From positions 1 through 64,000 of IMG/VR virus record IMGVR_UViG_3300008448_000001: DNA of 64,000 nucleotides. One strand, 5' to 3'. This document shows positions 3,856-49,059 of the stretch, piece by piece. Both the position numbers and the translations under genes were made by a program. Position 1 is the stretch's first letter. Each line of letters begins with the position of its first letter. A model generated the notes under the pieces. It saw only the letters and a program-made list of their open reading frames with translations. It was not told the DNA's origin and did no database searches.

Positions 3856-4248
3856 CTAGCGTTGGCTGCTGGCGTGGTTCATTTTGCAATCGACAAACTC
3901 CGGCTGTTGGACCAGGTTTGTAATTTCGTTTTTAACGGCGACCCGGTTTCGGTTGTGGTTCCGAATAGCGACAGCGCGTTTGCCGATTTCGGCTAGGCCT
4001 AGCTCCAGGTCTAGCCCTTTTCGCAAGTCGTACTCGAGATCCCACATTTTCCCGTTGATTTCCTTCAGGCGGGAAACAAGATCCAGAAGCTGCGCATTGT
4101 CTTTGTCGACGCCTTCTCGCAAGTAGTTAATTTGTTTCGAAAGGAGCTCTTTGTCTACTTCGGTTTCGGACAGGCGTTCCATCTTCAGTTCTGCGATCGT
4201 TAGTCTGTCGCAGAGTTCGTTTATTGGCATTGGGATAGGTTTGATCAT
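3856..4248 (-). CDS. DUF6165/DUF4254-like helical protein
   Basis: PINELCDRLTIAELK ... LKEINGKMWDLEYDLRK ... NRNRVAVKNEI pattern; start at 4248 or 4230. Confidence 0.7.
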   Translation of the reverse strand: MIKPIPMPINELCDRLTIAELKMERLSETEVDKELLSKQINYLREGVDKDNAQLLDLVSRLKEINGKMWDLEYDLRKGLDLELGLAEIGKRAVAIRNHNRNRVAVKNEITNLVQQPEFVDCKMNHASSQR

Positions 4249-5356
4249 GTTTAGAAAAATTTTAGCTGTTAGCGATTTGCATTTGTCGGACACCATTTGG
4301 AAACACCGGCCTATCCATGGAGACAGCTACCACAGCTGGAGCTACATTGTGCAGTACGCTGTGCTGGCAGGCGTTGACGCTGTAATTCTAGCGGGCGACA
4401 TCTTGGACAAGCAACTAAATGTTGCAAATCCTGTTGCAAAGCTGAATGCGGGGCTTCTAAAGCTGCGAGACGCCGGAGTGACCGTGCTTTACAATCAGGG
4501 TCAACACGAGTTTCAACGCGACTTACCGTGGATGGACGTGGCCAACTTGGGTGCGAAACATTTAAAAGGCAAGTCGGACTTTTGCTTTTCGAACGGTCTT
4601 CGGATAGCTGGATTCGACTACTGCAACGAGAAAACTCTTGCGGAAAGGCTGGGTGAAATCGAAAAGGATTCTGGACAAGAGTATTTTCTTGTCTGTCACC
4701 AGGTCTGGAAAGATTTCATGGGTGACGTTGGAAAGACACAAGGTTGCTTTGATGATCTACCCAAAAACGTCAGATTTATGTTAACTGGTGATTTCCACCA
4801 AACGATTGTTCGCGAGGTTAGCAAAGATTTGACGGTTTTAAGCCCCGGAAGCACGCATTTGCGCAGCTTGGCGGAGCCGGCGGAAAAGCATTTCTTCGAG
4901 ATAAGTGCTGACCAGAAGGGCTTGTCGATTGAAGTCCGCGACATACCGACTCGGAGATACCTGGAAGTCAAAACAGGTACTTTGCCGTACTTACAGATTT
5001 CTGAGCGGGTTAAAACGTTTGTCGGACAAGATTTCGGAGATCTCCCGGAGGAGCTGCGGAAACCGATTGTTCGAATCGTCCACGGCAAGGATGATTTTGA
5101 TTTTGTGCGGCACATCAAAGAGAGTTTTGACGGCCTTGCTCACTTGTTTTTCAAGCTGAAGACGGTTTCTGTTGACGTTTTAAGTGTGGACACCACGACG
5201 GATGAGAGCCATTTGACGCTTCAAGCTTGTTTGCCGTTTGAGATCAACCCGCAGGGATCGCCTGCGGCCTACGGTTTGGCGTCCGAGCTTTTATCGGGTG
5301 CGGATCCGAACACTGTACTTGAACGTTGGTTAGAGGAGAATTTGAATGCAAATTGA
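4247..5356 (+). CDS. Mre11/SbcD-like metallophosphoesterase nuclease
   Basis: DLH, GDILD, GQHE, CHQ, GDFH motifs; directly upstream of the Rad50-like gene. Confidence 0.9.
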   Translation: MFRKILAVSDLHLSDTIWKHRPIHGDSYHSWSYIVQYAVLAGVDAVILAGDILDKQLNVANPVAKLNAGLLKLRDAGVTVLYNQGQHEFQRDLPWMDVANLGAKHLKGKSDFCFSNGLRIAGFDYCNEKTLAERLGEIEKDSGQEYFLVCHQVWKDFMGDVGKTQGCFDDLPKNVRFMLTGDFHQTIVREVSKDLTVLSPGSTHLRSLAEPAEKHFFEISADQKGLSIEVRDIPTRRYLEVKTGTLPYLQISERVKTFVGQDFGDLPEELRKPIVRIVHGKDDFDFVRHIKESFDGLAHLFFKLKTVSVDVLSVDTTTDESHLTLQACLPFEINPQGSPAAYGLASELLSGADPNTVLERWLEENLNAN

Positions 5357-7487
5357 GACAGTTGAGCTAAAGAACATCGGTCCCCACAGGGAGTTAACCG
5401 CGGAGTTGTCCTCTGGTATCGTCGGCATAGTCGGCGCCAACGGGGCGGGTAAGAGTTCGTTCGTGAACGCTATCTACGCCGCCTTTACGGGTGATTTCAC
5501 ACGCTTCAACGTGGCAACAAAGGCCGAGGCCATTAACAATCAGGCAGCTAAGCACGAAAAGTCTTGGATTAAGATTGTTGGAAACCATGGTTGTAAGCCG
5601 TTTGAGCTGGTTCGAAGCCTGCGTCCGAACGAGGTGACCTTCACATACGGCGACAGTGAGATCGAGACGGCTTCGCAGGTCAATGGCGCAGTTTTCAAGC
5701 TGCTGGGCCTGACGCCAAGCGTTTTTGATCGTTATGTGTTTGTCGAGCAGTGGGAAATGTTCAGCTTTCTTGATGACACGGAAAGCGTGCGGGCTAAAGC
5801 GTTTCAGCACTTGTGTGGAGTCGAGTCGGCCACTTCGCTGCACAAGGCTTGCGTGCAATTCCGGGACAGGCTCACGGCGAAGCAGTCAATTGACAACAGC
5901 CTGGACCTAGAAAGCAACATTGATCAAATTCAGAGGGAAATGCTGCGACTTAAGCGTACGAAGTTCGAAGGCTTGCTGCCCGACGACGAGGCAGCTGAAT
6001 TGCGACAGAAGCGGGATCTTTATCTGAAGGTTTCGCAGCTCGAGTCGCTTAAGTCGCAGGGTCTTATTGACCTCGAAGCATTGAAAAATGTTCTAGGCGA
6101 CAAAGAAAAAGTTTTCCAGGACGTGGAAACAAAGTTTAACAGAGCTGCCGATTGGCTGAAAAAGCACAAGACTTTGCTTGAAGCTGCGGTAGGGACTTTA
6201 CGCGACTGGCAGGCACAAAGCTCTCTTCAATCCAAGCAGGTAAGATGCCGTTCACTTATTAGAGACTGGGAGGCTAAGGTTGAAGCGACCGACGCAGAAA
6301 TAGCTTTGCACGCTGCAAAGTCTCCGAGTTTTTCGAAAGAGGAACTTGCGGGCTTAAAAGCGGAACTTCAAAGTTTAAGAACAAAAGCGAAGGAGTTAAA
6401 AACCGCCGTTAGTAACTTGGAGCAAGGCAGTCGGGCTGTGTGTTCTTCGTGCATGCAGAACATTCCTGCGTCGCATTCGGTGAAATTAAAAGCTGAAGCG
6501 GACGCTGTCGAAAGGCTGGCGGTGGAGAAAGCAAGACAGGTCATGGCCTCGCAGAACTATTGCGATCGGTCGGAATATCTGCTTGAGTTACGAAGAGAGC
6601 AGCAAGGTCTTTTGGTGAAATACCAATCGGAGCTGCAGGGACTGTCGCAGGCTTCGCAGTCGATTGTAACGCAAGACGCGGCAGACAGGGCAACGGCAGC
6701 CCTCGAGCAGCGTAAAAAGGCGGAAGCATCGTTTGCGGAGAGCAAACCGAAGCGAGACAGGTTGAAAGCAGAATTGGACGTGCTGAGAGGCCGCATATCG
6801 AACGCTGAAAGCCAGCTGCAAGAGTACGAGGCTCAGCTTGCAACTTTGACAACGGATCTCGGGTCGGCTGACGCATCGATACAGGAGAAGCTCGAACGGC
6901 ACGACGAGGCTTTACGCCAAAAGGCTGCGGTTTCCGCCGAGTACAAGACTAACGCAACGCAGTTGAGTACTTTGCAGGCGACGTTGAACAAGCTGAAAAC
7001 CTCGCTTGCCCGAGAAGCCAAGACCAGGTCGTTGGCCGAAGTAGTGGACAGGGTCGCTAACGCTTTTCATTGGTCTGGACTACCTAAGCGGGTAGCGCAG
7101 AACAATTTGATGCAGTTGGAAGCGGACATCAATACGCAGCTCGAGCTCTTCAGTTCTCCTTTTTTGGTTGAAACAACTGACGACCTGTCTTTCAAGGCGA
7201 CTTTCCCTGGCAAGCCCAGCGTGTCGGCAAGGCAGCTCAGTGGTGGTCAGAAAGTTATCCTGGCCATTGCTTTTCGGGCGGCTTTGGATAGGCTTTTCGG
7301 GCATAATATTGGGATGTTGTTCCTGGACGAACCTACGGCGGGATTGGACGCAGACAACGTCGCTTACTTCCATGACGCGATGCAGAGCTGGTCTGCAAAC
7401 GTTGGGGCGCAGAAGCAGATTATTGTCATCACGCACGTCCAAGACATGACAAGTGCCTTCGACCAAATTGTAACGATCGATAAATGA
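5346..7487 (+). CDS. Rad50/SbcC-like SMC ATPase
   Basis: Walker A GANGAGKS, long coiled coil with CSSC zinc hook, LSGGQ signature, LFLDEP, ITH. Confidence 0.95.
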   Translation: MQIETVELKNIGPHRELTAELSSGIVGIVGANGAGKSSFVNAIYAAFTGDFTRFNVATKAEAINNQAAKHEKSWIKIVGNHGCKPFELVRSLRPNEVTFTYGDSEIETASQVNGAVFKLLGLTPSVFDRYVFVEQWEMFSFLDDTESVRAKAFQHLCGVESATSLHKACVQFRDRLTAKQSIDNSLDLESNIDQIQREMLRLKRTKFEGLLPDDEAAELRQKRDLYLKVSQLESLKSQGLIDLEALKNVLGDKEKVFQDVETKFNRAADWLKKHKTLLEAAVGTLRDWQAQSSLQSKQVRCRSLIRDWEAKVEATDAEIALHAAKSPSFSKEELAGLKAELQSLRTKAKELKTAVSNLEQGSRAVCSSCMQNIPASHSVKLKAEADAVERLAVEKARQVMASQNYCDRSEYLLELRREQQGLLVKYQSELQGLSQASQSIVTQDAADRATAALEQRKKAEASFAESKPKRDRLKAELDVLRGRISNAESQLQEYEAQLATLTTDLGSADASIQEKLERHDEALRQKAAVSAEYKTNATQLSTLQATLNKLKTSLAREAKTRSLAEVVDRVANAFHWSGLPKRVAQNNLMQLEADINTQLELFSSPFLVETTDDLSFKATFPGKPSVSARQLSGGQKVILAIAFRAALDRLFGHNIGMLFLDEPTAGLDADNVAYFHDAMQSWSANVGAQKQIIVITHVQDMTSAFDQIVTIDK

Positions 7488-8308
7488 CAGATAGACAAAC
7501 CGTTTGTTTGCACGCAGACTCCAACGGCGACGTTTGGAGTCTGCAGGCTGGAAAAGGCATAGTTAGGCCTAAGTTTGACGTTTTACCTGCGTCGGACTTC
7601 TGGGTTGTTGGTTTCCCTTCCAATTATGCCATTCTGACGGAGTTGTACTTTGACACCGTAAGACGTTACAGCGCAAACGAAAAGAATTTGTCCAGCATAT
7701 ATGTCGGCTCGGTTTTTCCTTGGCGTCATTTTGACTGCAAGTCTAAGGATTTCCTGTACGATGTTGTTGCAGTTCCGCCTGCCAAGCGGCAAGCTTCGCA
7801 TTGGCACCTGCTGGACGATGCGTCCATCAGCACGTACTTACTTGCTAAAAGTTTATACGACGCATCTTACGACATGGCGGAGGTGGCCTGGCAAAACCAT
7901 TGTCTGGCCCCTGTTTTTTCGCGACTCGGCTGCGATGCGGACTTAGATCCTGCGATGTTTCTGGTTGCTGACATCTTGGATCCCCGTTGGTTCATGTCAG
8001 CAAACGGAAGTTTCAAGGCTTTGGAGCGGTACTTTGGACTTCAAAAGAGGTCGCACAGACTAGCGGACGCGAAATTTTTCATGCTGTCGGACGCCGTGAA
8101 AGCGATACCGAGCAATAGTTTTTTGCACGCGGAGGCCGAAGTCAGGAATCCGAGAGACAAGCTTTTCGCGATGCCTAGATTGTTTTTGCATTTTTTTGTA
8201 CGACATTGGCTTTCGTTTCAAACGCGGCTTTCGTTTTTTGATCCGTCTTTGTTCTTCAAAAGCCAGAAAGCAAAGCAAATGTACATAGATATTTTCGATC
8301 CGCAGTGA
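7484..8308 (+). CDS. hypothetical protein with IS110/Nop-domain-like C-terminal region
   Basis: AMFLVADILDPRWF...ALERYFGL and RLFLHFFVRHW resemble the conserved blocks of IS110/Nop RNA-binding domains; the ORF is well supported, the fold is tentative. Confidence 0.5.
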   Translation: MTDRQTVCLHADSNGDVWSLQAGKGIVRPKFDVLPASDFWVVGFPSNYAILTELYFDTVRRYSANEKNLSSIYVGSVFPWRHFDCKSKDFLYDVVAVPPAKRQASHWHLLDDASISTYLLAKSLYDASYDMAEVAWQNHCLAPVFSRLGCDADLDPAMFLVADILDPRWFMSANGSFKALERYFGLQKRSHRLADAKFFMLSDAVKAIPSNSFLHAEAEVRNPRDKLFAMPRLFLHFFVRHWLSFQTRLSFFDPSLFFKSQKAKQMYIDIFDPQ

Positions 8309-8787
8309 CAGAGTTTATCGCACGCTTACAGTTTGTCTCGCCTTGCCTGGGTAACGCCAAAGAACCCGGGTCGGGAAGGTTTTTGTTTAGTCGAAACCGC
8401 GAAGGCAAGATAGTTTTCTTGCCTGCTTGGCACAAATCGAACATGGTGATGGCAGCCAATTTGATATCAGGCTATCGCGAAGAAGTGCAACGTATTCTGT
8501 GGAGCACGGTGGTCGATGTAGAGCTGCGTGACAAACGATGGCATCGAGTTTACTATATGAGTGCTGCAGGCAGGGAGCGTTACTCTGTTCACGAGTCAAT
8601 CGCTGCGGGACAGTTGGCAGAAATAAGCCTTTCGCTTCCTGAGAACTTGCCGGTCGATGCTTTTTCGCGTTTGCTGGGGATTGCAGGTAAGCACAAAGGC
8701 TTATCGCCATGGCAACCCGGCACGTATGGGCACTACAGGGTTGTTGACGTGTTTGCGAAACCGACTCTGTTTACGGATAGTGAATAA
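8305..8787 (+). CDS. minimal Cas7-like RAMP protein (phage stand-alone type)
   Basis: N-terminal strand LQFVSPCLG, FSRNREG, HESIAAG and C-terminal G-rich loop GKHKGLSPWQPGTYGHYRV. Confidence 0.7.
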   Translation: MTEFIARLQFVSPCLGNAKEPGSGRFLFSRNREGKIVFLPAWHKSNMVMAANLISGYREEVQRILWSTVVDVELRDKRWHRVYYMSAAGRERYSVHESIAAGQLAEISLSLPENLPVDAFSRLLGIAGKHKGLSPWQPGTYGHYRVVDVFAKPTLFTDSE

Positions 8788-8819
8788 AAAAACCACCCGA
8801 GTTGTGACCCTCGGGTGGT
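8786..8819 (-). terminator. 10-bp hairpin with an A-run on the + strand side (intrinsic terminator in - orientation, or a structural RNA element)
   Basis: ACCACCCGAG 8792-8801 / CTCGGGTGGT 8810-8819, A-run 8786-8792. Confidence 0.5.
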
Positions 8820-8880
8820 AATTGGCTTAGCTGTCGTCGTTGCAGCTGATGCCATTTTAGCTGAAACCCTTTTACTTACA

Positions 8881-10428
8881 ATGGGACGCAGTATGGGTAA
8901 AGAAGTTGTTTTGATAAAAAACGGGAACATTTTGCTTGTTGATCCGGGCGTTGCAGACCAGAAAATAGTGGATATTCTGGGGCCCAAGCTTAGTTTCGAA
9001 TCGTTCCGCAAACTGGTCGGGCGTGAACTGTACGACGCAAAAAGAAACGGTTTAAAGACCTTCGCTATTGATCGGCATATCCTTTTCGAGCTGGACTTCA
9101 AGGGCCGGGTTGCCACGCCGTTTGGGTTTTGGAAAACCATATCTGAAACGCTGAGGGCCGCTGGCTATTCTGTAAGCTACAAGGACAACACGCCGACTGT
9201 CGTGAATCAACAACATAAAGCCGCGAAAAACCGAGCTTTACGTTTTGAGATGTTCATGGATAACATTGCAAGCTATCAGTTGCGAGATCATCAACCGGAG
9301 TTCCTGGATGCCATCATCAGAAACAGCTGTGGACGAATAGACTGCGCACCGGGTTTCGGTAAATCTTTCATGATTGGAATTGTGGCCTCTGTATTCCCTC
9401 GTGCGAGGATCGACGTTGTTTCCAAGCGTGTAGCGGTTCTGCGGGACAGAATTTACCCGGAGCTCACTTCGATGGTGGGTGACGTGGGTATCGTTGGCGG
9501 AGGAAAGAGCATCAAGGATCGCCGAGTTATGTGCTACACGGCTAACTCGTTGAAGCACAGCAAGGCGGACGCAGACATACTGATCGGGGACGAGTGTCAC
9601 GAACTCGCGGCGGATAAGGCGTCAGAGGAGCTCGTTCGCTATCAGGACAGTCGAAATTACGGGCTGTCGGCCAGCCACGACGTTCGTTACGACAACAAGG
9701 ACATGCGTTTGGAGGGCATATTCGGGCCGATCATCTACCGTGTTCCGTACCAGACAGCCCAAGGCTCCGGCCTGGTTGTTCCGATCGAGATAAGATGGAC
9801 AAACGTTAGACTGGACTACAATCCGTGTGCAGGGGTGGACACGGACGATTCTGTAAGGCGTAAACGCATCGGAATATGGACCAACGAATTGCGTAACTTG
9901 GCTATTGCAAACGACGCGAAAGCTTACGACAAGGACACGCAGGTTCTAATCACGGTCGACACAATTACTCACGCTTTTCATCTCAAGAAGCTGCTGCCGG
10001 AATTTACGCTGGTGTACGCGGACGAGGGACTGACGCCCGAGGAGTTGCAGAATTACAAGCGGCAGAAGTTTTGCTCTGCAACGGAGCCGCTGATGGACTT
10101 CACAAGAAAGAAGATGCTGACGCAAAAGTTTGAAAAGGGAGAGCTCAAGAAAGTGATCGCGACAACGGTGTGGAATGTCGGTGTTTCGTTCAACAATTTG
10201 ACTGTGCTTATCCGAGGTAATGGCGGTAGCAGTGCGATCGACAGCACGCAGATTCCTGGTCGCGTAAGTCGTATTGCGGACGGTAAAACTTTCGGTATTA
10301 TCCACGACTACCTCGACGGTTGGGACAAAGGCTTTGATCGTCAAACTAAAGGCCGTCTCAAGGTTTATCGCCAGCACGGTTGGGCGCAGAAATTCCCTGA
10401 CTCGCACCTTGAAAGGCTTTATTCTTAA
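8881..10428 (+). CDS. superfamily 2 DNA helicase (UvsW-like)
   Basis: CAPGFGKS Walker A, DECH, SAS motif III, QIPGRVSR motif VI; start at 8881 or 8893. Confidence 0.9.
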   Translation: MGRSMGKEVVLIKNGNILLVDPGVADQKIVDILGPKLSFESFRKLVGRELYDAKRNGLKTFAIDRHILFELDFKGRVATPFGFWKTISETLRAAGYSVSYKDNTPTVVNQQHKAAKNRALRFEMFMDNIASYQLRDHQPEFLDAIIRNSCGRIDCAPGFGKSFMIGIVASVFPRARIDVVSKRVAVLRDRIYPELTSMVGDVGIVGGGKSIKDRRVMCYTANSLKHSKADADILIGDECHELAADKASEELVRYQDSRNYGLSASHDVRYDNKDMRLEGIFGPIIYRVPYQTAQGSGLVVPIEIRWTNVRLDYNPCAGVDTDDSVRRKRIGIWTNELRNLAIANDAKAYDKDTQVLITVDTITHAFHLKKLLPEFTLVYADEGLTPEELQNYKRQKFCSATEPLMDFTRKKMLTQKFEKGELKKVIATTVWNVGVSFNNLTVLIRGNGGSSAIDSTQIPGRVSRIADGKTFGIIHDYLDGWDKGFDRQTKGRLKVYRQHGWAQKFPDSHLERLYS

Positions 10429-11233: not shown

Positions 11234-12928
11234 ATGAGTGGGCAGCAAAAAGTGCTGTCAGAAGCTCATTTGAAACTCTTTTTGGCTGTCTTGTTTCGCA
11301 ATGAGCAAGTGTTCGAGAGTTTCAAAGCAAGCCTGACAGCGAGTCATTTTGACTTTGCAGGGTATCAACTGCTCTACAAAGTTGTTTGGGATTACTTCAA
11401 CGAAAATCAATGTCTTCCGGATTTGTCGCAGATCAACGCGGACATTGCCAGTTACGTCGAAAAAGAATACTTTTCTCTCGACGATGACGAGTACGACGCG
11501 TTAGACGATTTTCTGTACTACGCTTTTGACCCTGGCCTGTTTAAGGAGCCGGACGGTCCGAAAAGCATCAAGGCAGAAAATTTCGCTTTTAACTTCGCGA
11601 CTAAGTTTTTGCTGGAGCAGCAGAAACGAGCCGCTATTTCTCAGCTGAGTGACCTCAGCGATGTAGGCCAGTTGCCGGCCATCTTTCAACAGGCTACAGC
11701 ACAAACTGAGTCGTTGATGGGTTTGTCGGTTTCCGGGGGCAGAAACCTGACGCTTCCGGTTGGCTGGGATAAACGGGCTGGTGTTTACCTGGAGTCTTGC
11801 GGTGTCAGTTTTCTGGATACCTTTCTTGAGGGTGGAACTGCCCCGGGCGAGGCCTACGGCGTGCTGGCACCGTTCGGATCCTACAAAACTACCTTGGCTG
11901 TAATGCTTTGGTACGCTGCCGCTAAGCAAGCGTGTAGTAAGTACTTGAGCGGGGAGTCGAACGGTAAAAAGGGCTTGGCAGTTCTCGTGTCTTATGAAGC
12001 GCCGTTGCAGGACGAGTTGCGGGACCGACTGCTGATGTATTCAGCACAGATATCTCGAACGCGGCTTCAAGCCATGGGCACGAACGGCGTTTCTATATTT
12101 GGAGTCGACCCGGAGACTCCGCAAGACTACGAAAAGATTTTGTTCAAGGAGCAGATAGCAAACGGTGTTTTTGAACCGGAGATGCAACGGTATGAGCGAG
12201 TTTTGCCGGTCGTGAACGAGCACACAGTTTGTCTTGATTTCACGGGCAGGCACGAGAAGTTTAAGACGGCTGGTAATCGTGGCGTATCGGAAATCGTTTC
12301 CGCGATAAAAGCGGAATTAAAGCGTTGCGGACCGGACTACTACATCGCGACCGTCATAGTCGACTATGTTGGGCTTATGGTGCAAAGAGATGCAACGGTG
12401 GACCCGAAGGAAAAACAACGCGAAGACAGGCTTTACCAGCTCGCAGGATTACAGCTTGTCAATCGCGTTGCTATGCCTTTTAACACACCTGTTTGGGCTT
12501 TTCACCAGCTTTCCGGCGAGGCAAATGCGATATTGAATCCTGCGAAAAGAATGGATCACACGCAAGCTAAAGGCTCTAGAAGTTTTGCCGAAAATCTGGC
12601 TTTCTGTTTTGTGGGTGGTCGTTTGAATGACGATTACATGGGTCAACTTTGTTGCTCCAAGCATCGGCGAGCCGGTCAGCACAATCCTGTGCTGTTAAAG
12701 GTTGACGGCTTGTTTAACACCGTCACGGCACCAGAAGGTTATACCGTGGACAGGCTTGGTAAGATCGTCAGGAAAGACAGCCTAGGTTCTTCGACTGTTT
12801 TGTCTCCGGATATGTTTAGTTCGGTTCCGGGCCTGTCGGAAACAGTAGAAGATCCTTTTGCCGATTACACAGAAGACAGCAGCATGGATTACGCTTCGGA
12901 GCAGGTTTCGAATTTAAGCGAAGAATAA
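11234..12928 (+). CDS. DnaB/gp41-like replicative helicase
   Basis: APFGSYKTT Walker A variant, VSYE, IVDYVGLM Walker B, HQLS, KHR; upstream of primase. Confidence 0.8.
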   Translation: MSGQQKVLSEAHLKLFLAVLFRNEQVFESFKASLTASHFDFAGYQLLYKVVWDYFNENQCLPDLSQINADIASYVEKEYFSLDDDEYDALDDFLYYAFDPGLFKEPDGPKSIKAENFAFNFATKFLLEQQKRAAISQLSDLSDVGQLPAIFQQATAQTESLMGLSVSGGRNLTLPVGWDKRAGVYLESCGVSFLDTFLEGGTAPGEAYGVLAPFGSYKTTLAVMLWYAAAKQACSKYLSGESNGKKGLAVLVSYEAPLQDELRDRLLMYSAQISRTRLQAMGTNGVSIFGVDPETPQDYEKILFKEQIANGVFEPEMQRYERVLPVVNEHTVCLDFTGRHEKFKTAGNRGVSEIVSAIKAELKRCGPDYYIATVIVDYVGLMVQRDATVDPKEKQREDRLYQLAGLQLVNRVAMPFNTPVWAFHQLSGEANAILNPAKRMDHTQAKGSRSFAENLAFCFVGGRLNDDYMGQLCCSKHRRAGQHNPVLLKVDGLFNTVTAPEGYTVDRLGKIVRKDSLGSSTVLSPDMFSSVPGLSETVEDPFADYTEDSSMDYASEQVSNLSEE

Positions 12929-12949: not shown

Positions 12950-14050
12950 GTGGCAGACAAAAAACCCTTAAATATGTTGCTTTACAATCGTATTAAAGCG
13001 ACCTTTAAGAATGTCAGGATAAGTCATCAAAACGAGAAGCAAGAAAGGAACCGTCGAATTGATTTTGTTACCAATCGTGAAACGATCGACATAAAAAACT
13101 GGGGTGAGTCTTACTCTGTCTGCTGCCCGTTTTGCAACGATACTCGCTTTCGGTGTGTGATAAACCACCGGTATGGTACGCTGGACGAACACAACCGGAT
13201 TCAATCTAGGCTTGTGGTTTGCTTTAACGCCGGTTGTCCGCTGGCCTTGAAAACCCAAGACTGCTACGACCGACTTGAGCAGATGCTGACCGGAAGAAAA
13301 CTTTTTGACCTAGCTAAAGCGGAAATCGCAGTCGGTAGCGAGGTAGACATTGACGACTTCAGAATGAACTGGCCAGGTGAAGTTGTTCGCATAGATAAAC
13401 TTCCAGAAGACCATCCGGCTGTTTTGTGGCTTTCCGGAAACCGCGGTTTCAACGTGAAGAAACTCGGCACGTATTACAATGTTCACTGGTGCGTTAAAAG
13501 CAGACATGCTTTATGTCGCGACAGAATTGTCATACCGATTTACATGAACAAGAAGATGGTCGGTTTCCAAACCAGACCGCCTTACGACACAAACTGGAAG
13601 CTTGCGAGTGTTCCCAAGTACTACACCGCCAAGGGCACACCTAAGCGGCAGGTCATCTACAATCTTGGGAACATGATAAAGTGTGAAACCGGAATTGTTG
13701 TAGAGGGTGTTACGAGCGTTTGGCGGGGCGGTGATCCGTTCGGTGCTGTACTCGGTGCTGCTGTGACGCCGGCTCAATACGATTTACTCGTGAAGCACTT
13801 CAAAGACCATGCCGTTGTTTTGCTTTTCGACCCGGATCTGTTGCTAGAAAGCGAGAAGCGGAAAGTTTTGGACAGCTTGGTGGCAATCGAAAAACGCTTG
13901 AACGCGGATTTGAAAGGTGGTTGCTGCTTGGTTTGGTTGCCGGAGGGCACTGATCCGGCGGAATTCGAGGGGAATTTCTTGCGTAATTACATCGTCAATG
14001 CGGCGGCAGAGAAGGGTGTGACGGTCTCTTGGAGGAAGCGAAATGGCTAG
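12950..14050 (+). CDS. DNA primase (Zn-binding plus TOPRIM)
   Basis: CPFC..C.N.GC zinc domain, RIVIPI, FQTR, PKY, VEG, FDPD, LPEGTDP. Confidence 0.85.
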   Translation: MADKKPLNMLLYNRIKATFKNVRISHQNEKQERNRRIDFVTNRETIDIKNWGESYSVCCPFCNDTRFRCVINHRYGTLDEHNRIQSRLVVCFNAGCPLALKTQDCYDRLEQMLTGRKLFDLAKAEIAVGSEVDIDDFRMNWPGEVVRIDKLPEDHPAVLWLSGNRGFNVKKLGTYYNVHWCVKSRHALCRDRIVIPIYMNKKMVGFQTRPPYDTNWKLASVPKYYTAKGTPKRQVIYNLGNMIKCETGIVVEGVTSVWRGGDPFGAVLGAAVTPAQYDLLVKHFKDHAVVLLFDPDLLLESEKRKVLDSLVAIEKRLNADLKGGCCLVWLPEGTDPAEFEGNFLRNYIVNAAAEKGVTVSWRKRNG

Positions 14051-17000
14051 AAAGATAGAGAAGCTCGGCGGTGCCATCAGCGCTTCTGGTAAAGCAACTG
14101 TTGCCGAACAAAGACTTAAGCTGTCGCAGCTGGATAAAATACTTACAGGGTCTGAGATTTACAACTTGGACGCACCAGGTCTGCCTACGCTCTACGGCGG
14201 AAGTGCTTTTATTCAGTATGCTCAGGCGAAGGGCGACAGCAGTGATTCCTTCATGTATGACCTGATAAGGGCAGCTCTTCGGGACAAAGCGTTCGTTTTG
14301 CCAGTTGAAACGGCAGCGCATCAAACGAAAGACGCTCAGTTTTTGCCAGGGCATGTGTGGGGTTCAACTGTGGACGGGCCTAGGCGGGCCAAGATTATGA
14401 TCGTCAACAAAAACCCTTGGGTTTCAGCGATGAAAAACGGTCGTTGTTTTGGCGACGAGGATGGAAAAATCCTCATGGACATTTTTGCAGGCTGCAAGAT
14501 GACAGGTGTCGGAAACATTTACGTTACGCACCTTGTAAAGTTTATGCCGCCCAACGGTAAAACGACTTTCAGGGCTCAGTGGGTGAAGGACGGTGCTTAT
14601 CTTCTGGCACACGAGATCAAAATCGTGCAACCGGATTATATCTTGTGTCTAGGCACTGACGCCAGTAAGGCTTTGCTGGGCGACGGGCACGGTGTTAACG
14701 ACATGCTGGGTAAAGTCGTCAAGCACCGTTACAACGTTGCCTCGAACGAGAAAGACTTGGACTCGAGTTGGCGTGAGGCGAGCGTGATGACTGTCGTGCA
14801 TCCGCGTCAAACGGCAAGAGACCAGTCGGCTATCCGCGCGTTGGAAACGGGCTTAGCCGCCTTTGTAAACTTGACGCAGGGCAAGAACGTTAGCTTTGAC
14901 ACGGAAGTGGACCACAATGTGGTTTCTTCGTTTGATGAATTGATTTACTATTTTTCAGAAATCGACAAAGACTACGACCCTATTGAGGAGGTGATTGCGG
15001 TCGACGCGGAGTGGAACGGACAGCATCCGGTCAACAATGGTTCGTACATGCGGACAATTCAGCTTGCTTGGAAACCGGGAAAGGTAATCGGTATCATTCT
15101 GCATCTTGCAGGGGGTGCCGTTAATTCGGACATTGACGTCAAAAACAATCCCGAAGTTAAATCGTTGTTCAACGCTTTTTTCAAGGGAGGAAACGTCACC
15201 GTCACGCGAGAGGACGGGTCAGAAGCAGTTCTTCGGTTCAAACGCAAGCGTGTAATCGGGCACTTCTTCAACGCGGATTTGGAGTGGCTTGTTGCCTATG
15301 GTATAGACATTCAAGAGTGCTTCTCGTGCAAGCTCTATGACTTGGAAATACCTCCGGCAGATTCCGTACCGAAGGGCGCAAAGAGGCTTTTGAGCTTTTA
15401 CCTTGAAGACGGGTTTAAGCCCGGAGAAACCGTTCCGGCTTGGTACCGGACAAAGTACGAGGGCGGGGCTGACACGGGCCTTATGTGCCACGCGATAGAA
15501 GAGACGGCCAACTACAAGCTTGAGCTGCTTGCGGCCAGGTATCTTAACGCGCACAGATATGACGTGGATTTGCAAGAGTGGAAGACCAGCTACTGCAAAC
15601 AAAAGGGTCTGTCGTCGGAGTCGCTCGAAGGATATGGCGAATGCCCAGACAACGTCTTGCTGCCTTACGGCATGTGGGATGCGGATGTCACGCTTCGACT
15701 TTACTATAAGTTCAATCCTTTGCTCGATAGCGACTACGACGGTAACTGCTGCAGAGAAGCTTTTTGGGAAGCACAAATCGCCACGCCGGCTGTGTTGGAC
15801 ATTCACCGCAGCGGCATGACGCTCGACAGATCACGTGTTGATTTTCTGACGGTGCAGTTCCTTGACGGTCGAACCGCACTGGAGAGTAAAATACGCGAAA
15901 GTTTGAATTGGCCGGACTTCAACATTCGGTCTTTAACGCAGGTGCGAGAGGTCCTTTTCGGGCATTTGCTCAACGGCAAGCGAGACCCTGAGACAGGCGG
16001 TCCCGTTCGTGTGCGGCCAGCCGACGCGATCTCGTTGAACCTTATGCCGCTGTACGATACCAGCAAACCGCCGAAACAGTGGGAAGAGCTTCGACAAAAA
16101 AATGTTGAAAGCCAGCACAGCCCTTGTACCAGCAAGCAGGTTTTGTCAATTCTGGTGCAGACGGTGCCAGACGCAAAAACAAGAGAAATACTTGGGATGC
16201 TTCGGGATCACCGCTTTCTTGACCAAGCGTTGAAAACGGTTTTAAGGCCACCAAATACCGATCCTTGTACACAGGAAACTTGTTATGACGCTGACGGAAA
16301 CATGGAGTACGACAAGGGCCTAGCTTCCGTTTGTTGCTCAGACGGTAAAATCAGGACGCACATATACCAGACGAAGGAGACTGGTAGGTGGTCGAGCGCT
16401 AGACCCAACCTGACGAACATATCGAAGAAGCGTGACAAGGATTTCAAACGCATTCTAGGTAGCAGGTACAAGTATAAACTGCGAAGTATTTTAAAGGCCT
16501 CTCCGGGACACGTTTTCGTTGAAGCTGACTACGTCGGAGCAGAGCTTTTCGGTATGGCTGTTATGTCGGGAGACACAGCCATGATCGAGCACGCAAGGCG
16601 TAACCAGTTGGAGGACACGCACCCCAATTACTATGACATTCACTCGAATGTGGCAGTTAACGCCTTCAAGCTGAAATGCCCTCCAACCAAAAAAGGTCTG
16701 GAGCAGATCAAAAAGGATCACCTCCGCAACGTGGCGAAGTCCGTTATTTTCGGGATTGCTTACGGGCGAGGTGCCAAGGCTATTTCAGTGGGTGCGAAGG
16801 AGGAAGGTATCGATATTTCGGTGGACGAAGCAAGAGCGGTTATCAAGACCATTTTCGCAACGTACCCGAAGCTCGTACCGTTCTTCGAGGGTTGCAAGGA
16901 GCGTGCACGCGGTTACTACTTGGATAGTAATCATCAACCTGTGTCCGTACCGCGATACCTGTGCAACTGCTTTGGGCGATTTAGGCGTTTTCCGGACAGC

Positions 17001-17564
17001 TTTGGCGCTAGCGATTTGGAATCCGAGTTTGAACGGCAAGCTATGAATTTCCCGATTCAAAGCATGATTGCTTCGGTGGCAAGCAGGGCTGTTGGTTACC
17101 TGATTGACTACAGGAACAAGCAGATCAGCCTCGGGCACCACATGTTCAATTTGCTTCTGCAGATCCATGACGCATTGATCTTGGAGGTTCCGTACCGCTA
17201 CGTTAAACACGTGTGCGAGTATGTCATTCCTACGTACATGCGAAAAGCCGTCCCTATTTTCCCGACGCACATTAGCGGTATGCTCGAGGGTGAGCCCACA
17301 GGTGCGGGTCCCTTCTACCTTGGTATTGAGGGGGAGGTGACTACAAACTGGGGCGAGCGTATATTTGACGCGGACGCCAAAAGGCTTGGTCTGCCCGTAG
17401 GTCGTGGCGTTGTAGACGGATGCGTCGTGCACTATAGTCAGACGCCAAAAGCAGGCGAAGAGAGATCCGTTGTGGACGTCTCGAAACCTCGCGTCAAGCG
17501 AGACATAACACCTCCGGATCCGTATGTACCTGGTAAGTTCAAGTCATCAAAACGTAGGCGATAA
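14043..17564 (+). CDS. family A DNA polymerase with N-terminal uracil-DNA-glycosylase-like domain and 3'-5' exonuclease
   Basis: UDG-like block (YVTHLVK, EIKIVQPDYILCLG, HP); Exo I/II/III (VDAE, NADL, YGMWD); TGRWSS; motif A DYVGAEL; motif B RNVAKSVIFGIAYG; motif C QIHD. Confidence 0.95.
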   Translation: MARKIEKLGGAISASGKATVAEQRLKLSQLDKILTGSEIYNLDAPGLPTLYGGSAFIQYAQAKGDSSDSFMYDLIRAALRDKAFVLPVETAAHQTKDAQFLPGHVWGSTVDGPRRAKIMIVNKNPWVSAMKNGRCFGDEDGKILMDIFAGCKMTGVGNIYVTHLVKFMPPNGKTTFRAQWVKDGAYLLAHEIKIVQPDYILCLGTDASKALLGDGHGVNDMLGKVVKHRYNVASNEKDLDSSWREASVMTVVHPRQTARDQSAIRALETGLAAFVNLTQGKNVSFDTEVDHNVVSSFDELIYYFSEIDKDYDPIEEVIAVDAEWNGQHPVNNGSYMRTIQLAWKPGKVIGIILHLAGGAVNSDIDVKNNPEVKSLFNAFFKGGNVTVTREDGSEAVLRFKRKRVIGHFFNADLEWLVAYGIDIQECFSCKLYDLEIPPADSVPKGAKRLLSFYLEDGFKPGETVPAWYRTKYEGGADTGLMCHAIEETANYKLELLAARYLNAHRYDVDLQEWKTSYCKQKGLSSESLEGYGECPDNVLLPYGMWDADVTLRLYYKFNPLLDSDYDGNCCREAFWEAQIATPAVLDIHRSGMTLDRSRVDFLTVQFLDGRTALESKIRESLNWPDFNIRSLTQVREVLFGHLLNGKRDPETGGPVRVRPADAISLNLMPLYDTSKPPKQWEELRQKNVESQHSPCTSKQVLSILVQTVPDAKTREILGMLRDHRFLDQALKTVLRPPNTDPCTQETCYDADGNMEYDKGLASVCCSDGKIRTHIYQTKETGRWSSARPNLTNISKKRDKDFKRILGSRYKYKLRSILKASPGHVFVEADYVGAELFGMAVMSGDTAMIEHARRNQLEDTHPNYYDIHSNVAVNAFKLKCPPTKKGLEQIKKDHLRNVAKSVIFGIAYGRGAKAISVGAKEEGIDISVDEARAVIKTIFATYPKLVPFFEGCKERARGYYLDSNHQPVSVPRYLCNCFGRFRRFPDSFGASDLESEFERQAMNFPIQSMIASVASRAVGYLIDYRNKQISLGHHMFNLLLQIHDALILEVPYRYVKHVCEYVIPTYMRKAVPIFPTHISGMLEGEPTGAGPFYLGIEGEVTTNWGERIFDADAKRLGLPVGRGVVDGCVVHYSQTPKAGEERSVVDVSKPRVKRDITPPDPYVPGKFKSSKRRR

Positions 17565-47120: not shown

Positions 47121-47240
47121 GTGTAGGTTTTTCGGTTTCAGTTTTTACTTTGGAGGTTTGATTGTGGCGGCCATTTTGCGTGGCTTAGCTGCTTCAAACA
47201 GCTTTTTATTTGTGACTGATTTTTAAAGAAGGTGCATAAC

Positions 47241-48183: not shown

Positions 48184-49059
48184 ATGATGACGAACACTAA
48201 TGAAAAGATAAAGCCAAAGCCGAAGTCAAAGGCAAAGCCGAAGCCGAAGAAAAAGCCGGAGAAGGGTTTAACGACTAAGGCTGAAAGAGATTTAGCGGAG
48301 AGCATTGGTTTTAAAGGCAGATACCTTTCTAAGTTGCTACAGGAAGCCGCAAAGTACTGTAAGTTTCAAGGCGGGCAATGCCTCCCGGATGCGGCCAGCT
48401 ACTTGCGTGAAATAGCAAGGCAGCACGCTGTGAAGGTAAAACAGCAGTGGGGAATGTCTGTTCGACAGTACAACCTGTTGCAAAAGAAAGCAAATTGGCT
48501 GCTCAGATCGTTTTCGACCGGTTATTCGATGGGGGAGCTGCGACGGCTTGTCGTCGACGGAAAGGACTTCTGCGTCGATGACAACCGGCGATACTATTCG
48601 AAATCTTACAGGTTCTCGGCAAAACACGGTGAAATCACTGTCCAGCTTACGCTGCAAGACTTGAAAAATATTAGGCGGATTGAAGGTGTCTGGACGGTTC
48701 GCCGCAAGGGGACAGCTGCAAGTTGGCTTGAGTCTCGCAGTTCACTCAGTAAATACCAGGTCACCATGGTCGACGGCCATTTGGTTGGCACATCGCACGG
48801 CAAAACCGTCGCAGAGTGTCACGGACTTGAAGCAGGAAAAGCTATTCGCAATGACACGGGAGAGGTCAAATTTCTCAACCGATTCATCGGGTTTGCAGAT
48901 CGAAGGCTCGCAGGGGCTTGCGAAATCGGCGTACGAGCCTTCTGTGATCGACACAATTTGAACATCGATTTCGGGTACCGGATCGATTTCTTATTGAGTC
49001 TTAACGACAACATTGCAGTACCTTACCTTGATCGCTTGGCGAAGAAGCTGCAGCGATAG
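48184..49059 (+). CDS. basic hypothetical protein with KP-rich N-terminus
   Basis: 291 aa; C-terminal GACEIGVRAFC motif. Confidence 0.75.
   Translation: MMTNTNEKIKPKPKSKAKPKPKKKPEKGLTTKAERDLAESIGFKGRYLSKLLQEAAKYCKFQGGQCLPDAASYLREIARQHAVKVKQQWGMSVRQYNLLQKKANWLLRSFSTGYSMGELRRLVVDGKDFCVDDNRRYYSKSYRFSAKHGEITVQLTLQDLKNIRRIEGVWTVRRKGTAASWLESRSSLSKYQVTMVDGHLVGTSHGKTVAECHGLEAGKAIRNDTGEVKFLNRFIGFADRRLAGACEIGVRAFCDRHNLNIDFGYRIDFLLSLNDNIAVPYLDRLAKKLQR

What the first reader, a model, noticed from the sequence alone, without database searches (positions are those of the whole stretch)
7484..8308. Degenerate IS110/Nop-like protein without clear catalytic motifs
Seen: NHCLAPVFSRLG...PAMFLVADILDPRWF...ALERYFGL and a terminal RLFLHFFVRHW helix. 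These parallel the IS110 '..IPGIG..AA.LLAEIGD..RF.....L..YAGL' block and its terminal helix. The following 'SG' serine loop and a clear N-terminal DEDD are not evident, and there are no IS-like ends; the gene overlaps both neighbours. Inference: a domesticated, non-transposing RNA-binding Nop-fold protein (TasA-like).
Basis: inference. Interest (0 to 1): 0.6.

Follow-up and report, generated by a model that had tools for sequence, protein, structure and literature searches.

The report
Array-less TasR-like protein beside a RAMP
The flagged gene encodes a compact relative of the RNA-guided TasR/IS110 proteins with a degenerate nuclease site; in a clade of freshwater jumbo phages it always sits between an SbcCD-like nuclease and a small CRISPR-type RAMP protein in the replication module, with no guide-RNA array anywhere in the genome.

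Summary
The ORF at 7484-8308 (274 aa, called X here) is real and conserved. A profile search found 54 cluster representatives. No Pfam, PHROG, NCBIfam or PDB sequence match explains it.

A confident AlphaFold model (pLDDT 92) matches TIGR-TasR over both domains (Z 11.7, 229 residues). Weaker matches are TasH (Z 8.2, C-terminal half) and the IS110 recombinases IS621 and ISCro4 (Z 6.7 and 6.5).

- The DEDD tetrad, the IS110 serine and the TasR coiled coil are absent.
- The complete 204.8-kb phage genome holds no TIGR array and no VIPR-type array.
- In 10 of 10 loci sampled, X follows an SbcC-like gene. A gene follows X in all ten: in seven it was confirmed as the 160-aa protein Y, in L016 it is an untested 180-aa ORF, and in two it is cut by the contig end.
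- Y folds as a Cas7/Csm3-type RAMP (Z 11.8) and weakly matches the Vipr protein of phage SUSP1.

X is not a transposon. It is best read as an array-less TasR-like protein recruited, with a RAMP, into the phage's SbcCD/replication operon. RNA binding and the actual function are inferred, not shown. A 2026 preprint mentions such an array-less "compact TasR" clade. I found no report of the RAMP and SbcCD linkage in the papers I searched.

The parts
7484..8308 (+). X: 274-aa compact TasR-like protein, the flagged gene
   Evidence: ORF. Family of 54 representatives. Model pLDDT 92.1, pTM 0.89. TasR 9mty_B Z 11.7 over 229 residues; IS621 Z 6.7.
7484..7813 (+). N-terminal RuvC/RNase H-like domain of X (about residues 1-110) with a degenerate active site
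   Evidence: Beta-beta-beta-alpha-beta topology. Matches to YqgF/RuvX, the Tex/Spt6 YqgF domain, and Cas12/TnpB RuvC at Z 4-6. Conserved positions are H10 89%, D12 72%, N47 100% and H108 74%; there is no conserved Glu.
7814..8305 (+). C-terminal IS110/Nop-type helical domain of X (about residues 111-274), carrying the DPRW...YFGL block and the terminal W242 helix
   Evidence: TasH 21kl_B Z 8.2 and 9w02_A Z 7.6 over residues 114-272. Invariant P167, R168 and W242. phrog_4285 'transposase' matches this region in relatives P0046 and P0053.
7514..7544 (+). Stable hairpin inside the 5' end of the X coding sequence (10-11 bp stem, 8-nt loop)
   Evidence: MFE -26.3 kcal/mol, z -3.4. The 9-bp core stem (CAGACTCCA / TGGAGTCTG), including its synonymous codon positions, is identical in 4 loci whose X proteins are 41-59% identical. 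A comparably strong hairpin lies in the first 120 nt of X in 9 of 9 loci, against a background of 0-12%.
8305..8787 (+). Y: 160-aa single-domain RAMP (Cas7/Csm3-like, Vipr-like), translationally coupled to X
   Evidence: Model pLDDT 95.4. Foldseek gave 128 PDB hits at E<=1e-3; the best is Csm3 at 3e-7, and all 31 rows printed are type III (incl. III-E Craspase) or type VII CRISPR effector-complex chains. VIA Z 11.8 (Csm), 11.7 (Cmr), 11.0 (gRAMP). The Y profile hits the SUSP1 Vipr gene at E 9.7e-5; hhalign E 3e-4.
8786..8847 (+). Conserved non-coding element directly 3' of Y: an A-run, a 10-11 bp hairpin (8792-8819), then a nearly invariant tract of about 24 nt
   Evidence: Three stem pairs show compensatory changes. 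The 30-nt window 8818-8847 ties (0.91, with an SbcC segment) for the most conserved stretch of the 4.5-kb region, on a par with segments inside the SbcC and helicase genes. It is essentially single-copy in the genome. No Rfam family matches.
4151..5356 (+). SbcD/Mre11-like metallophosphoesterase, first gene of the operon
   Evidence: Pfam Metallophos; phrog_100 SbcD-like.
5346..7487 (+). SbcC/Rad50-like ATPase, overlapping X by 4 nt
   Evidence: Pfam SMC_N, AAA_23 and SbcC_Walker_B; phrog_77 at 1e-42.
8881..10428 (+). SF2 DNA helicase. The true start is probably ATG 8881 or 8893, not GTG 8815
   Evidence: phrog_16 at 3e-40, ResIII and Helicase_C. Start inferred from the alignment of the intergenic region in relatives.

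Best explanation
X is a compact, array-less member of the TasR/IS110 structural lineage. It has a RuvC-like N-terminal domain that has lost the canonical acidic tetrad, and an IS110/Nop-type C-terminal domain without the TasR coiled coil.

It is not a mobile element and not a stand-alone defence locus. It is a fixed core gene of a four-gene, translationally coupled operon (SbcD-like, SbcC-like, X, Y) at the head of the replisome module. That module continues with a helicase, a DnaB/RecA-like protein, a Toprim primase-like protein and a UDG-PolA fusion. The operon belongs to a clade of uncultured freshwater jumbo phages. Y is a small Cas7/Vipr-like RAMP.

The shown steps are the fold, the loss of catalytic motifs, the invariant synteny and the absence of arrays.

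The inferred mechanism is as follows. X binds nucleic acid through its Nop-type domain, most likely a structured RNA or an RNA-DNA hybrid. It uses the dead RuvC-like domain as a DNA-contact module rather than a cutter, as the nuclease-dead TasR proteins do. Together with RAMP Y it would give the co-expressed SbcCD nuclease and helicase a sequence- or structure-specific handle during recombination-dependent replication. If a guide is used, it is a fixed RNA from the locus rather than a variable array. The candidates are the conserved 62-nt element 3' of Y and the hairpin in the 5' end of X.
For: Fold of X:
- TasR Z 11.7 over 229 of 274 residues; Foldseek E 6e-4 with nothing else significant.
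- TasH Z 8.2 and 7.6 on the C-terminal domain; IS621 Z 6.7 and ISCro4 Z 6.5 on both domains. Unrelated hits score Z 6.1 or less.
- The best Atlas shape match is a viral Transposase_20 cluster, TM 0.56.
- phrog_4285 'transposase' is hit by 3 of 54 relatives in the DPRW region.

Catalytic loss: there is no conserved Glu, D12 is only 72% conserved, and no Ser follows YFGL.

Coiled coil: the helices after the RuvC domain are 14 and 9 residues long. In TaTasR they are about 30 and 27 residues, as given in preprint 10.64898/2026.09.09.750476.

Synteny: SbcC then X in 10 of 10 loci, followed by a confirmed Y in seven, down to about 24% X identity. ORFs overlap by 4 nt.

Y is a RAMP. It is the second most conserved protein of the module after the helicase, whereas X is among the fastest-evolving.

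No arrays in the complete genome.

Conserved RNA-like elements flank the X-Y pair.

Precedent: nuclease-dead TasR and TasA act as RNA-guided DNA binders, and an array-less compact TasR clade in dense viral genomes has been noted as an open question.
Against: - No sequence-level significance to Tas, IS110 or Nop in Pfam, NCBIfam or PDB chains. Kinship rests on structure prediction.
- There is no RNA evidence at all. No RNA-seq run holds the locus.
- The X-Y complex prediction gave no answer.
- The well-conserved H10, N47, H108 and H139 in and beside the RuvC-like domain could form a non-canonical active site, so 'non-cutting' is not proven.
- The two hairpins could be ordinary mRNA processing, stability or terminator elements. 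The one after Y scores as a minus-strand terminator.
- A protein-only role in recombination would fit the housekeeping context equally well.
Confidence: 0.55

Rival explanations
1. X and Y form a divergent VIPR-type system. Y would be the Vipr RAMP that polymerises on a guide RNA, and X its accessory (Vap) protein. It would be used for inter-phage conflict or gene silencing, with a non-canonical or single vrRNA that my scans missed.
For: Y has a minimal single-RRM RAMP fold. The Y profile picks out exactly the SUSP1 gene flanked by YNNGG repeats, at E 9.7e-5, and hhalign gives E 3e-4. VIPR loci are typically a two-gene vipr-plus-vap pair in phages. Some types have a single vrRNA or another consensus. 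A conserved structured non-coding element lies directly 3' of Y.
Against: The genome has no YNNGG run of 5 or more units and no 5-nt periodic tract. There are no long intergenic flanks. X and Y are universal core genes at a fixed place in the replisome module, and Y is nearly as conserved as the helicase. That is unlike an arms-race accessory system. The hhalign probability is only 40% over 60 columns.
Confidence: 0.15
2. X is the effector of an ordinary TIGR-Tas system whose tigRNAs escaped detection. They might be embedded in coding sequence, encoded far away, or built on very divergent box C/D motifs.
For: The closest structure is TasR. Stem-loop tigRNAs can lie inside the tas ORF, and arrays lack sequence conservation. 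A strong hairpin lies in the 5' end of X in most lineages.
Against: The whole 204.8-kb genome was scanned. Periodicity at 20-79 nt and k-mer chains find only coding repeats. The CUU/CCA-N9-12-UG stem-loop motif occurs at chance level: 9 hits against 5-9 in shuffles, dispersed. The X hairpin has an 8-nt loop, too small for two 9-nt spacers. The coiled-coil dimerisation element that positions the two spacers is missing. The gene has a housekeeping context in 10 of 10 loci.
Confidence: 0.1
3. X works without RNA, as a structure-specific DNA-binding or DNA-cleaving factor for recombination. It would act as a RuvC/RuvX-like junction or flap factor with SbcCD. The Nop-like domain would serve only as a DNA- or protein-binding scaffold, and Y as an ssDNA binder.
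For: The N-terminal domain resembles YqgF/RuvX, poxvirus and mitochondrial resolvases at Z 4-5. The operon includes SbcCD and precedes a branch-type SF2 helicase. No recombination-junction resolvase was noticed in this module. Polar residues are conserved at the places where RNase H-fold active sites lie.
Against: The acidic residues needed for two-metal catalysis are not conserved. The two-domain match to RNA-guided proteins is far stronger than to any resolvase. The partner Y belongs to a fold class known for RNA binding.
Confidence: 0.15
4. X is a decaying IS110-family transposase, or the resemblance is a chance or model artefact.
For: There is no Pfam match.
Against: There are 54 divergent representatives with intact ORFs of similar length. 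The gene is single-copy. Synteny is fixed and the ORFs overlap. There is no serine or DEDD to decay from in any member. The model is high-confidence, and its top five hits all come from one structural lineage.
Confidence: 0.03

Closest known systems
TIGR-TasR (TaTasR, PDB 9MTY; Faure et al. [quoted passage not shown] 2026 (bioRxiv 10.64898/2026.09.09.750476)
   Same: Both have a RuvC-like N-terminal domain plus a Nop-type C-terminal domain of similar size. TasR is the best structural match (Z 11.7, 229 residues). The RuvC site is degenerate, as in nuclease-dead TasR proteins. Both are viral and lie in a densely packed genome with no array and no coiled coil, which is exactly how the preprint describes that clade.
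   Different: No sequence-profile link could be shown here. No tigRNA of either architecture was found. The preprint gives no neighbours or function for its clade, and its identifiers are not yet public, so identity of the two clades is inferred. The fixed SbcCD-X-RAMP operon inside a replisome module is not described there.
IS110-family bridge-RNA recombinases (IS621, PDB 8WT9; ISCro4, PDB 9T56)
   Same: Both have the same two-domain plan (Z 6.5-6.7 over about 220 residues). The C-terminal block 'A..L.A.I.DPR.F...L..YFGL' parallels the Transposase_20 'LLAEIGD..RF...L..YAGL' block.
   Different: X has no DEDD tetrad and no catalytic Ser loop. Pfam PF01548 and PF02371 do not match. There are no element ends, the gene is single-copy, and its position is fixed.
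VIPR systems (a Vipr RAMP, a Vap accessory protein and vrRNA; bioRxiv 10.64898/2026.04.26.720920), for the neighbour Y and the pair as a whole
   Same: Both are a phage-encoded minimal RAMP next to one accessory gene predicted to touch DNA. The Y profile weakly but specifically hits the SUSP1 Vipr gene.
   Different: There are no YNNGG repeats and no long intergenic flanks. The pair has a core-gene distribution inside a replication module. A TasR-like fold is not described among the Vap proteins in the text I could read.
Box C/D snoRNP Nop5/Nop56/58 and Prp31 (Nop domain)
   Same: They belong to the same wider structural superfamily as the Tas and IS110 C-terminal domain, according to Faure et al. 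2025.
   Different: No Nop-domain chain appeared among the top structural hits. The Pfam Nop model does not match. Partners such as fibrillarin or L7Ae were not looked for.

Membership tests
IS110-family transposase | Match to Pfam DEDD_Tnp_IS110 (PF01548) and Transposase_20 (PF02371) | tested here: not met
   No Pfam hit up to E 1 for X itself, up to E 10 for X and its 6 closest relatives, or up to E 1 for the 54 family members. A PF02371 search of the whole genome found nothing at E<=10.
IS110-family transposase | DEDD catalytic tetrad in the RuvC-like domain | tested here: not met
   The only acidic column above 50% in residues 1-125 is D12 (72%). Gly occupies the expected Glu site, and D111 is 44% conserved. 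Residue mapping is by topology, not by superposition.
IS110-family transposase | Catalytic serine in the loop after the YAGL block | tested here: not met
   No conserved Ser in columns 186-200 of the 54-sequence alignment.
IS110-family transposase | Two-domain fold (RuvC-like plus Tnp/Nop-like) | tested here: met
   IS621 8wt9_C Z 6.7 (224 residues) and ISCro4 9t56_A Z 6.5 (219 residues).
IS110-family transposase | Mobile element with ends, bridge RNA, and multiple or variable insertion sites | tested here: not met
   Single copy in the genome. Same neighbours in 10 of 10 loci, with overlapping ORFs.
TIGR-Tas (TasR) | Nop-type C-terminal domain | tested here: met
   TasR Z 11.7 over the whole protein. 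TasH Z 8.2 and 7.6 over residues 114-272.
TIGR-Tas (TasR) | N-terminal RuvC domain (active or inactivated) | tested here: met
   RNase H-like topology aligned with TasR from residue 5. The acidic tetrad is not conserved, as in the nuclease-dead TasR proteins described.
TIGR-Tas (TasR) | Coiled-coil dimerisation helices between the RuvC domain and the CTD | tested here: not met
   The helices at 112-125 and 129-137 are 14 and 9 residues long. TaTasR has about 30 and 27 residues, K109-D138 and A142-H168. Oligomeric state was not tested.
TIGR-Tas (TasR) | Associated TIGR array (dual-repeat 36-nt units, or stem-loop units with box C/D) | tested here: not met
   Whole-genome scans found nothing: autocorrelation, k-mer chains, and a motif-plus-stem scan at chance level. 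The largest real non-coding gap is about 520 nt. Very divergent units could still be missed.
TIGR-Tas (TasR) | Sequence-profile membership in the published Tas set | not testable with these tools
   No Tas HMM or sequence set is on hand. PDB chain sequences, including 9MTY, are not hit by the family profile at E<=10.
VIPR (for Y and the X-Y pair) | Vipr-type minimal RAMP (RRM core, G-loop, thumb) | tested here: inconclusive
   The RAMP fold is clear, and a G-rich C-terminal loop is conserved. The link to the SUSP1 Vipr protein is weak: E 9.7e-5 and hhalign E 3e-4 at probability 40%.
VIPR (for Y and the X-Y pair) | vrRNA with tandem YNNGG units flanking vipr | tested here: not met
   There is one 4-unit run in the whole genome, which is the chance level, and no 5-nt periodic tract. 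As a positive control, the same scan finds runs of 12, 6, 5 and 4 units at the SUSP1 locus.
RuvC/RuvX Holliday-junction resolvases | RNase H fold with conserved acidic catalytic residues | tested here: not met
   Fold similarity is only Z 4-5, and the acidic residues are not conserved.

The most novel reading that the evidence does not exclude
Two protein lineages otherwise known only from RNA-guided systems have been hard-wired together into a phage's core SbcCD and replisome operon. They are a TasR/IS110-type Nop protein and a Vipr/Cas7-type RAMP. With a fixed, locus-encoded RNA they would direct or license the Mre11-Rad50-like nuclease and helicase at specific sites, for example an origin R-loop, genome ends, or recombination intermediates. 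That would be a housekeeping, array-less RNA-guided step in phage DNA replication.
Probability: 0.2. Interest if true: 0.9.

Novelty: new variant of a known kind. Interest (0 to 1): 0.7.

Why it matters
TIGR-Tas and VIPR were described only in 2025-2026, as accessory guide-RNA systems of phages. A 2026 preprint left open what an array-less, coiled-coil-less 'compact TasR' clade in dense viral genomes does.

This locus gives that question a concrete and testable setting. The protein is a universal core gene of a jumbo-phage clade. It is co-transcribed with SbcCD and always sits near a strongly conserved RAMP (confirmed next to it in seven of ten loci). Two conserved RNA-like elements lie at the borders of the pair.

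If the pair binds a fixed RNA, it would show guide-RNA machinery turned to a replication or recombination task. It would also link the TasR/IS110 and RAMP lineages in one operon. If the pair binds no RNA, it is a clean example of exaptation of both folds for DNA metabolism.

Tried and rejected
**Searches that found nothing useful**
- Sequence searches on X against Pfam, PHROGs, NCBIfam, PADLOC and PDB chains, and tblastn against 50,697 phage records for X, for a distant relative and for Y.
- ESM-Atlas feature search. It gave DUF772 at 0.85, below the level at which such hits mean anything, and the Atlas's own model of X is poor (pLDDT 0.30). I rejected it as a lead.
- BFVD viral structure library: no match better than E 0.56.
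- Rfam: nothing at gathering score in the window, and only one sub-threshold chance match near Y.
- Public sequencing runs: the locus occurs in mostly lake and freshwater metagenomes (also several 'fungus metagenome' runs) from 14 studies, but no RNA run holds it. I therefore did not use read laying.

**Array hunts in the whole genome**
- Every periodic region turned out to be a coding repeat: collagen-like, pentapeptide-like, or Ala/Gly/Pro-rich.
- The stem-loop tigRNA motif occurs at chance level.
- YNNGG and 5-7-nt periodicity scans were negative.
- The conserved 15-mer of the element after Y is not a repeated promoter-like motif. Only one other intergenic near-match exists, at 47177.

**Complex prediction**
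- The X-Y run scored 0.00 with verdict 'no answer'. It is not evidence either way.

- The search for related loci could not use the 54-sequence alignment.
- One PHROG scan failed because I included a non-coding reference.

**Not possible with these tools**
- I could not obtain coordinates for a residue-level superposition on TasR.
- I could not build an IS110 or Tas alignment for hhalign.

No other genetic code was needed.
Full report
**Setting**

The window is the first 64 kb of a complete 204,794-bp virus record with short direct terminal repeats. I located the repeat at about 102 nt. Nearly all genes lie on the + strand and the genome is densely packed. The largest real non-coding gap is about 520 nt. 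The DNA polymerase is only about 25% identical to that of any cultured phage. Near-identical DNA occurs in mostly lake and freshwater metagenomes (plus several runs labelled fungus metagenome) from 14 studies. This is therefore an uncultured freshwater jumbo phage.

**The observation**

ORF 7484-8308 (+) encodes 274 aa, called X here. X overlaps the upstream and downstream ORFs by 4 nt each.

- Pfam, PHROGs, NCBIfam, PADLOC and PDB chain sequences give nothing for X.
- The word-based protein search found only six relatives.
- Because that left the protein open, I ran the exhaustive profile search, which found 54 representatives of 240-324 aa.
- In their alignment N47, P167, R168 and W242 are invariant. 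W107, H139, D166, W169, F252 and F258 are at least 90% conserved.

**Fold**

With the 54-sequence alignment, AlphaFold2 gives pLDDT 92.1 and pTM 0.89. The model has an N-terminal beta-beta-beta-alpha-beta domain of the RNase H type, followed by an all-helical domain.

| Search | Match | Score | Region of X |
|---|---|---|---|
| Foldseek, PDB | TIGR-TasR 9MTY, the only significant target | E 6e-4 | both domains |
| VIA-align, no Foldseek prefilter | TasR 9mty_B | Z 11.7, 229 residues | 5-272 |
| VIA-align | TasH 21kl_B, 9w02_A | Z 8.2, 7.6 | 114-272 |
| VIA-align | IS621 8wt9_C | Z 6.7 | 4-259 |
| VIA-align | ISCro4 9t56_A | Z 6.5 | 3-257 |
| VIA-align | unrelated RNase H-fold domains (Spt6/Tex YqgF, RuvX, TnpB/Cas12 RuvC) | Z 6.1 or less | N-terminal domain only |
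| ESM Atlas, by shape | 321-aa viral cluster, 89% with Pfam Transposase_20 | TM 0.56 | 4-260 |

Three of the 54 relatives hit phrog_4285 ('transposase') weakly (best E 1e-4); in the two I could identify, P0046 and P0053, the match lies in or just before the DPRW region. The BFVD library of viral models has no match.

The precise statement is that X is TasR-like (RuvC plus Nop), not TasA-like.

**What is missing**

In the RuvC-like domain the only acidic column above 50% is D12 (72%). The strand end where RuvC, IS110 and Cas9 carry the catalytic Glu is Gly in most members. D111 is 44% conserved. This mapping is by topology, because I had no coordinates for a superposition.

The conserved polar residues are instead H10 (89%), N47 (100%), H108 (74%) and H139 (91%). 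They lie where RNase H-fold active sites lie, so the site is remodelled rather than simply decayed. I cannot exclude a non-canonical activity.

No Ser is conserved after YFGL, so the IS110 serine is absent. The helices after the RuvC domain are 14 and 9 residues long. The TaTasR coiled coil has about 30 and 27 residues (boundaries quoted), so the dimerisation coiled coil is reduced to a stub.

**Guide arrays**

I read Faure et al. 2025 for the dual-repeat TIGR architecture. I read Xu et al. 2026 for the stem-loop architecture.

- Over the whole genome, autocorrelation at periods 20-79 and k-mer chain searches find only coding repeats. These are a collagen-like ORF, pentapeptide-like ORFs, and Ala/Gly/Pro-rich or Lys-rich tracts.
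- A scan for boxC-N9-12-boxD-loop-boxC-N9-12-boxD flanked by a stem of at least 5 bp gives 9 hits, against 5-9 in shuffled genomes. The hits are dispersed and none lies near X.

[quoted passage not shown] They call its guide source an open question. X fits that description in every respect I can test. Their identifiers are not public, so I cannot prove identity.

**Context**

I sampled 10 independent loci. They range from 98% down to about 24% X identity, and they include the peripheral members and those that hit phrog_4285.

- In all ten, X directly follows an SbcC/Rad50-like gene.
- In all ten a gene follows X directly. In seven of them (the query's own locus makes eight) it was confirmed as Y by alignment or profile search. 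L016 has an untested 180-aa ORF there, and in the other two the contig ends inside the gene.
- Where the contig reaches further, the full order is SbcD-like, SbcC-like, X, Y, SF2 helicase, a 264-aa protein, a 564-aa protein, a 366-aa protein and a UDG-PolA fusion.
- The 564-aa protein has faint AAA_25/RecA-like hits in relatives. The 366-aa protein has a weak Toprim/DnaG-like hit.

X is therefore a core gene of the replication and recombination module, not a mobile or accessory gene.

**The neighbour Y**

The 160-aa ORF at 8305-8787 has no family hit, but it has more than 268 relatives on contigs of up to 236 kb. Its model has pLDDT 95.4.

- Foldseek gives 128 PDB hits at E<=1e-3. The best is Csm3 at 3e-7, and every one of the 31 rows printed is a chain of a type III (including type III-E Craspase) or type VII CRISPR effector complex.
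- VIA-align gives Z 11.8 (Csm), 11.7 (Cmr), 11.0 (gRAMP) and 10.1 (Csm3) over essentially the whole protein. More than forty of the top 50 are CRISPR RAMPs.
- A conserved Gly-rich loop precedes the last strand.

A literature search led to the VIPR preprint, which describes phage-encoded minimal RAMPs (Vipr) with an accessory gene and YNNGG-repeat guide RNAs.

- The Y profile, searched over the 90.7-kb genome of phage SUSP1, hits one place at E 9.7e-5.
- That place is the 195-aa gene flanked by long intergenic regions. My scan finds YNNGG runs of 12, 6, 5 and 4 units there, which identifies it as the SUSP1 vipr locus.
- hhalign gives E 3e-4 with probability 40% over the C-terminal 60 columns.

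Y is therefore a RAMP and possibly a distant Vipr relative. The same scan finds no YNNGG run beyond chance and no 5-nt periodic tract in this phage.

Across distant loci Y is the second most conserved protein of the module, at 0.71-0.88 bits per residue. The helicase scores 0.75-1.03 and X only 0.11-0.21. A complex prediction for X with Y gave no answer.

**RNA-like elements at the borders of the pair**

Directly after the Y stop codon lies an A-run, then a 10-11 bp hairpin (8792-8819) in which three pairs show compensatory changes. A nearly invariant tract of about 24 nt follows. The window 8818-8847 is tied for the most conserved 30 nt of the 4.5-kb region, equal to segments inside the SbcC and helicase genes. 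The element is essentially single-copy and matches no Rfam family. The pattern scan scores the hairpin as a minus-strand terminator. This region also shows that the helicase probably starts at ATG 8881 or 8893.

Inside X, nt 31-61 of the ORF (7514-7544) form a hairpin with a 10-11 bp stem (z -3.4). Its 9-bp core stem, including the synonymous codon positions, is identical in four loci whose X proteins are only 41-59% identical. A comparably strong hairpin occurs in the first 120 nt of X in all 9 loci examined. The local background frequency is 0-2% for six of the eight relatives tested against their own sequence, 9-12% for the two GC-rich ones, and about 1-2% for the query locus against its own genome.

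These elements may be ordinary mRNA processing or stability signals. They are also the only candidates for a fixed RNA ligand.

**Interpretation**

Shown:
- X has the TasR/IS110 two-domain fold.
- X lacks the DEDD tetrad, the IS110 serine and the coiled coil.
- X is a single-copy core gene, translationally coupled to SbcC upstream and to a RAMP downstream.
- The complete genome has no recognisable TIGR or VIPR array.

Inferred:
- X binds RNA or RNA-DNA hybrids through the Nop-type domain.
- X uses the dead RuvC domain to contact DNA, as nuclease-dead TasR proteins do.
- X acts with Y to give SbcCD and the helicase specificity during recombination-dependent replication.
- If a guide is used, it is a fixed RNA from the locus.

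The rivals are a divergent VIPR system, an ordinary TIGR system with undetected guides, a protein-only recombination factor, and a decaying transposase. They are weighed in their own sections. The transposase reading is effectively excluded.

**Novelty**

TasR, nuclease-dead TasR and an array-less compact clade are in the literature. In the papers I could search, I found no report linking a Tas-like protein to a RAMP or to SbcCD. I therefore rate this a new variant of a known kind. It has clear experimental handles on an open question.

Noticed in passing
window 8305-8787: The 160-aa ORF translationally coupled to the flagged gene is a single-domain Cas7/Csm3-like RAMP. It has more than 268 relatives and no family annotation, and its profile weakly hits the Vipr gene of phage SUSP1.
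   Followed up: yes
window 8786-8847: A conserved non-coding element lies after the RAMP gene. It has an A-run, a hairpin with three compensatory pairs, and then an invariant tract of about 24 nt. It is as conserved as segments inside the SbcC and helicase genes, is single-copy, and matches no Rfam family.
   Followed up: partly
window 7514-7544: A 10-11 bp hairpin lies inside the 5' end of the flagged ORF, with synonymous sites frozen in four loci. Strong hairpins occur in the first 120 nt of the gene in all nine loci examined.
   Followed up: partly
window 8815-8893: The helicase ORF listed from GTG 8815 probably starts at ATG 8881 or 8893. The stretch before it is the conserved non-coding element.
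   Followed up: partly
window 14043-17564: A 1173-aa fusion combines a uracil-DNA-glycosylase-superfamily domain, a 3'-5' exonuclease and a family A DNA polymerase. It is conserved in all related loci that reach that far.
   Followed up: no
window 12950-14050 and 11234-12928: The 366-aa ORF has a weak Toprim/DnaG-like hit. Relatives of the 564-aa ORF have faint AAA_25 or RecA-like ATPase hits. They are probably the primase and the replicative helicase or recombinase of the module.
   Followed up: no
window 3856-4296 (minus strand): A 146-aa minus-strand ORF lies just upstream of, and overlaps, the SbcD-like gene. Minus-strand genes of 123-125 aa sit at the same place in L003 and L005. Homology was not tested, and the SbcD start may be the downstream Met.
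   Followed up: no
G000:C1 159105-161882: A 925-aa ORF with a long collagen-like Gly-Pro-Gln repeat (9, 18 and 36-nt periodicity). It mimics a 36-nt array in periodicity scans.
   Followed up: partly
G000:C1 168017-169467 and 197575-198129: ORFs built of 15-nt (five-residue) repeats, resembling pentapeptide-repeat proteins, are present in at least three copies.
   Followed up: no
window 48196-48264 and 56051-56165: Two coding low-complexity repeats: a Lys/Ala/Pro-rich hexanucleotide repeat at the start of ORF 48184-49059, and an 18/54-nt Glu-Ala-Lys repeat in ORF 54737-56800.
   Followed up: no
G000:C1 1-102 and 204693-204794: The direct terminal repeat of the record is only about 102 nt long.
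   Followed up: partly
window 5346-7487: The best PADLOC match of the SbcC-like ATPase is the Lamassu SMC protein LmuB (1e-37). I take this as generic Rad50/SMC similarity, given the adjacent SbcD-like gene and phrog_77.
   Followed up: no
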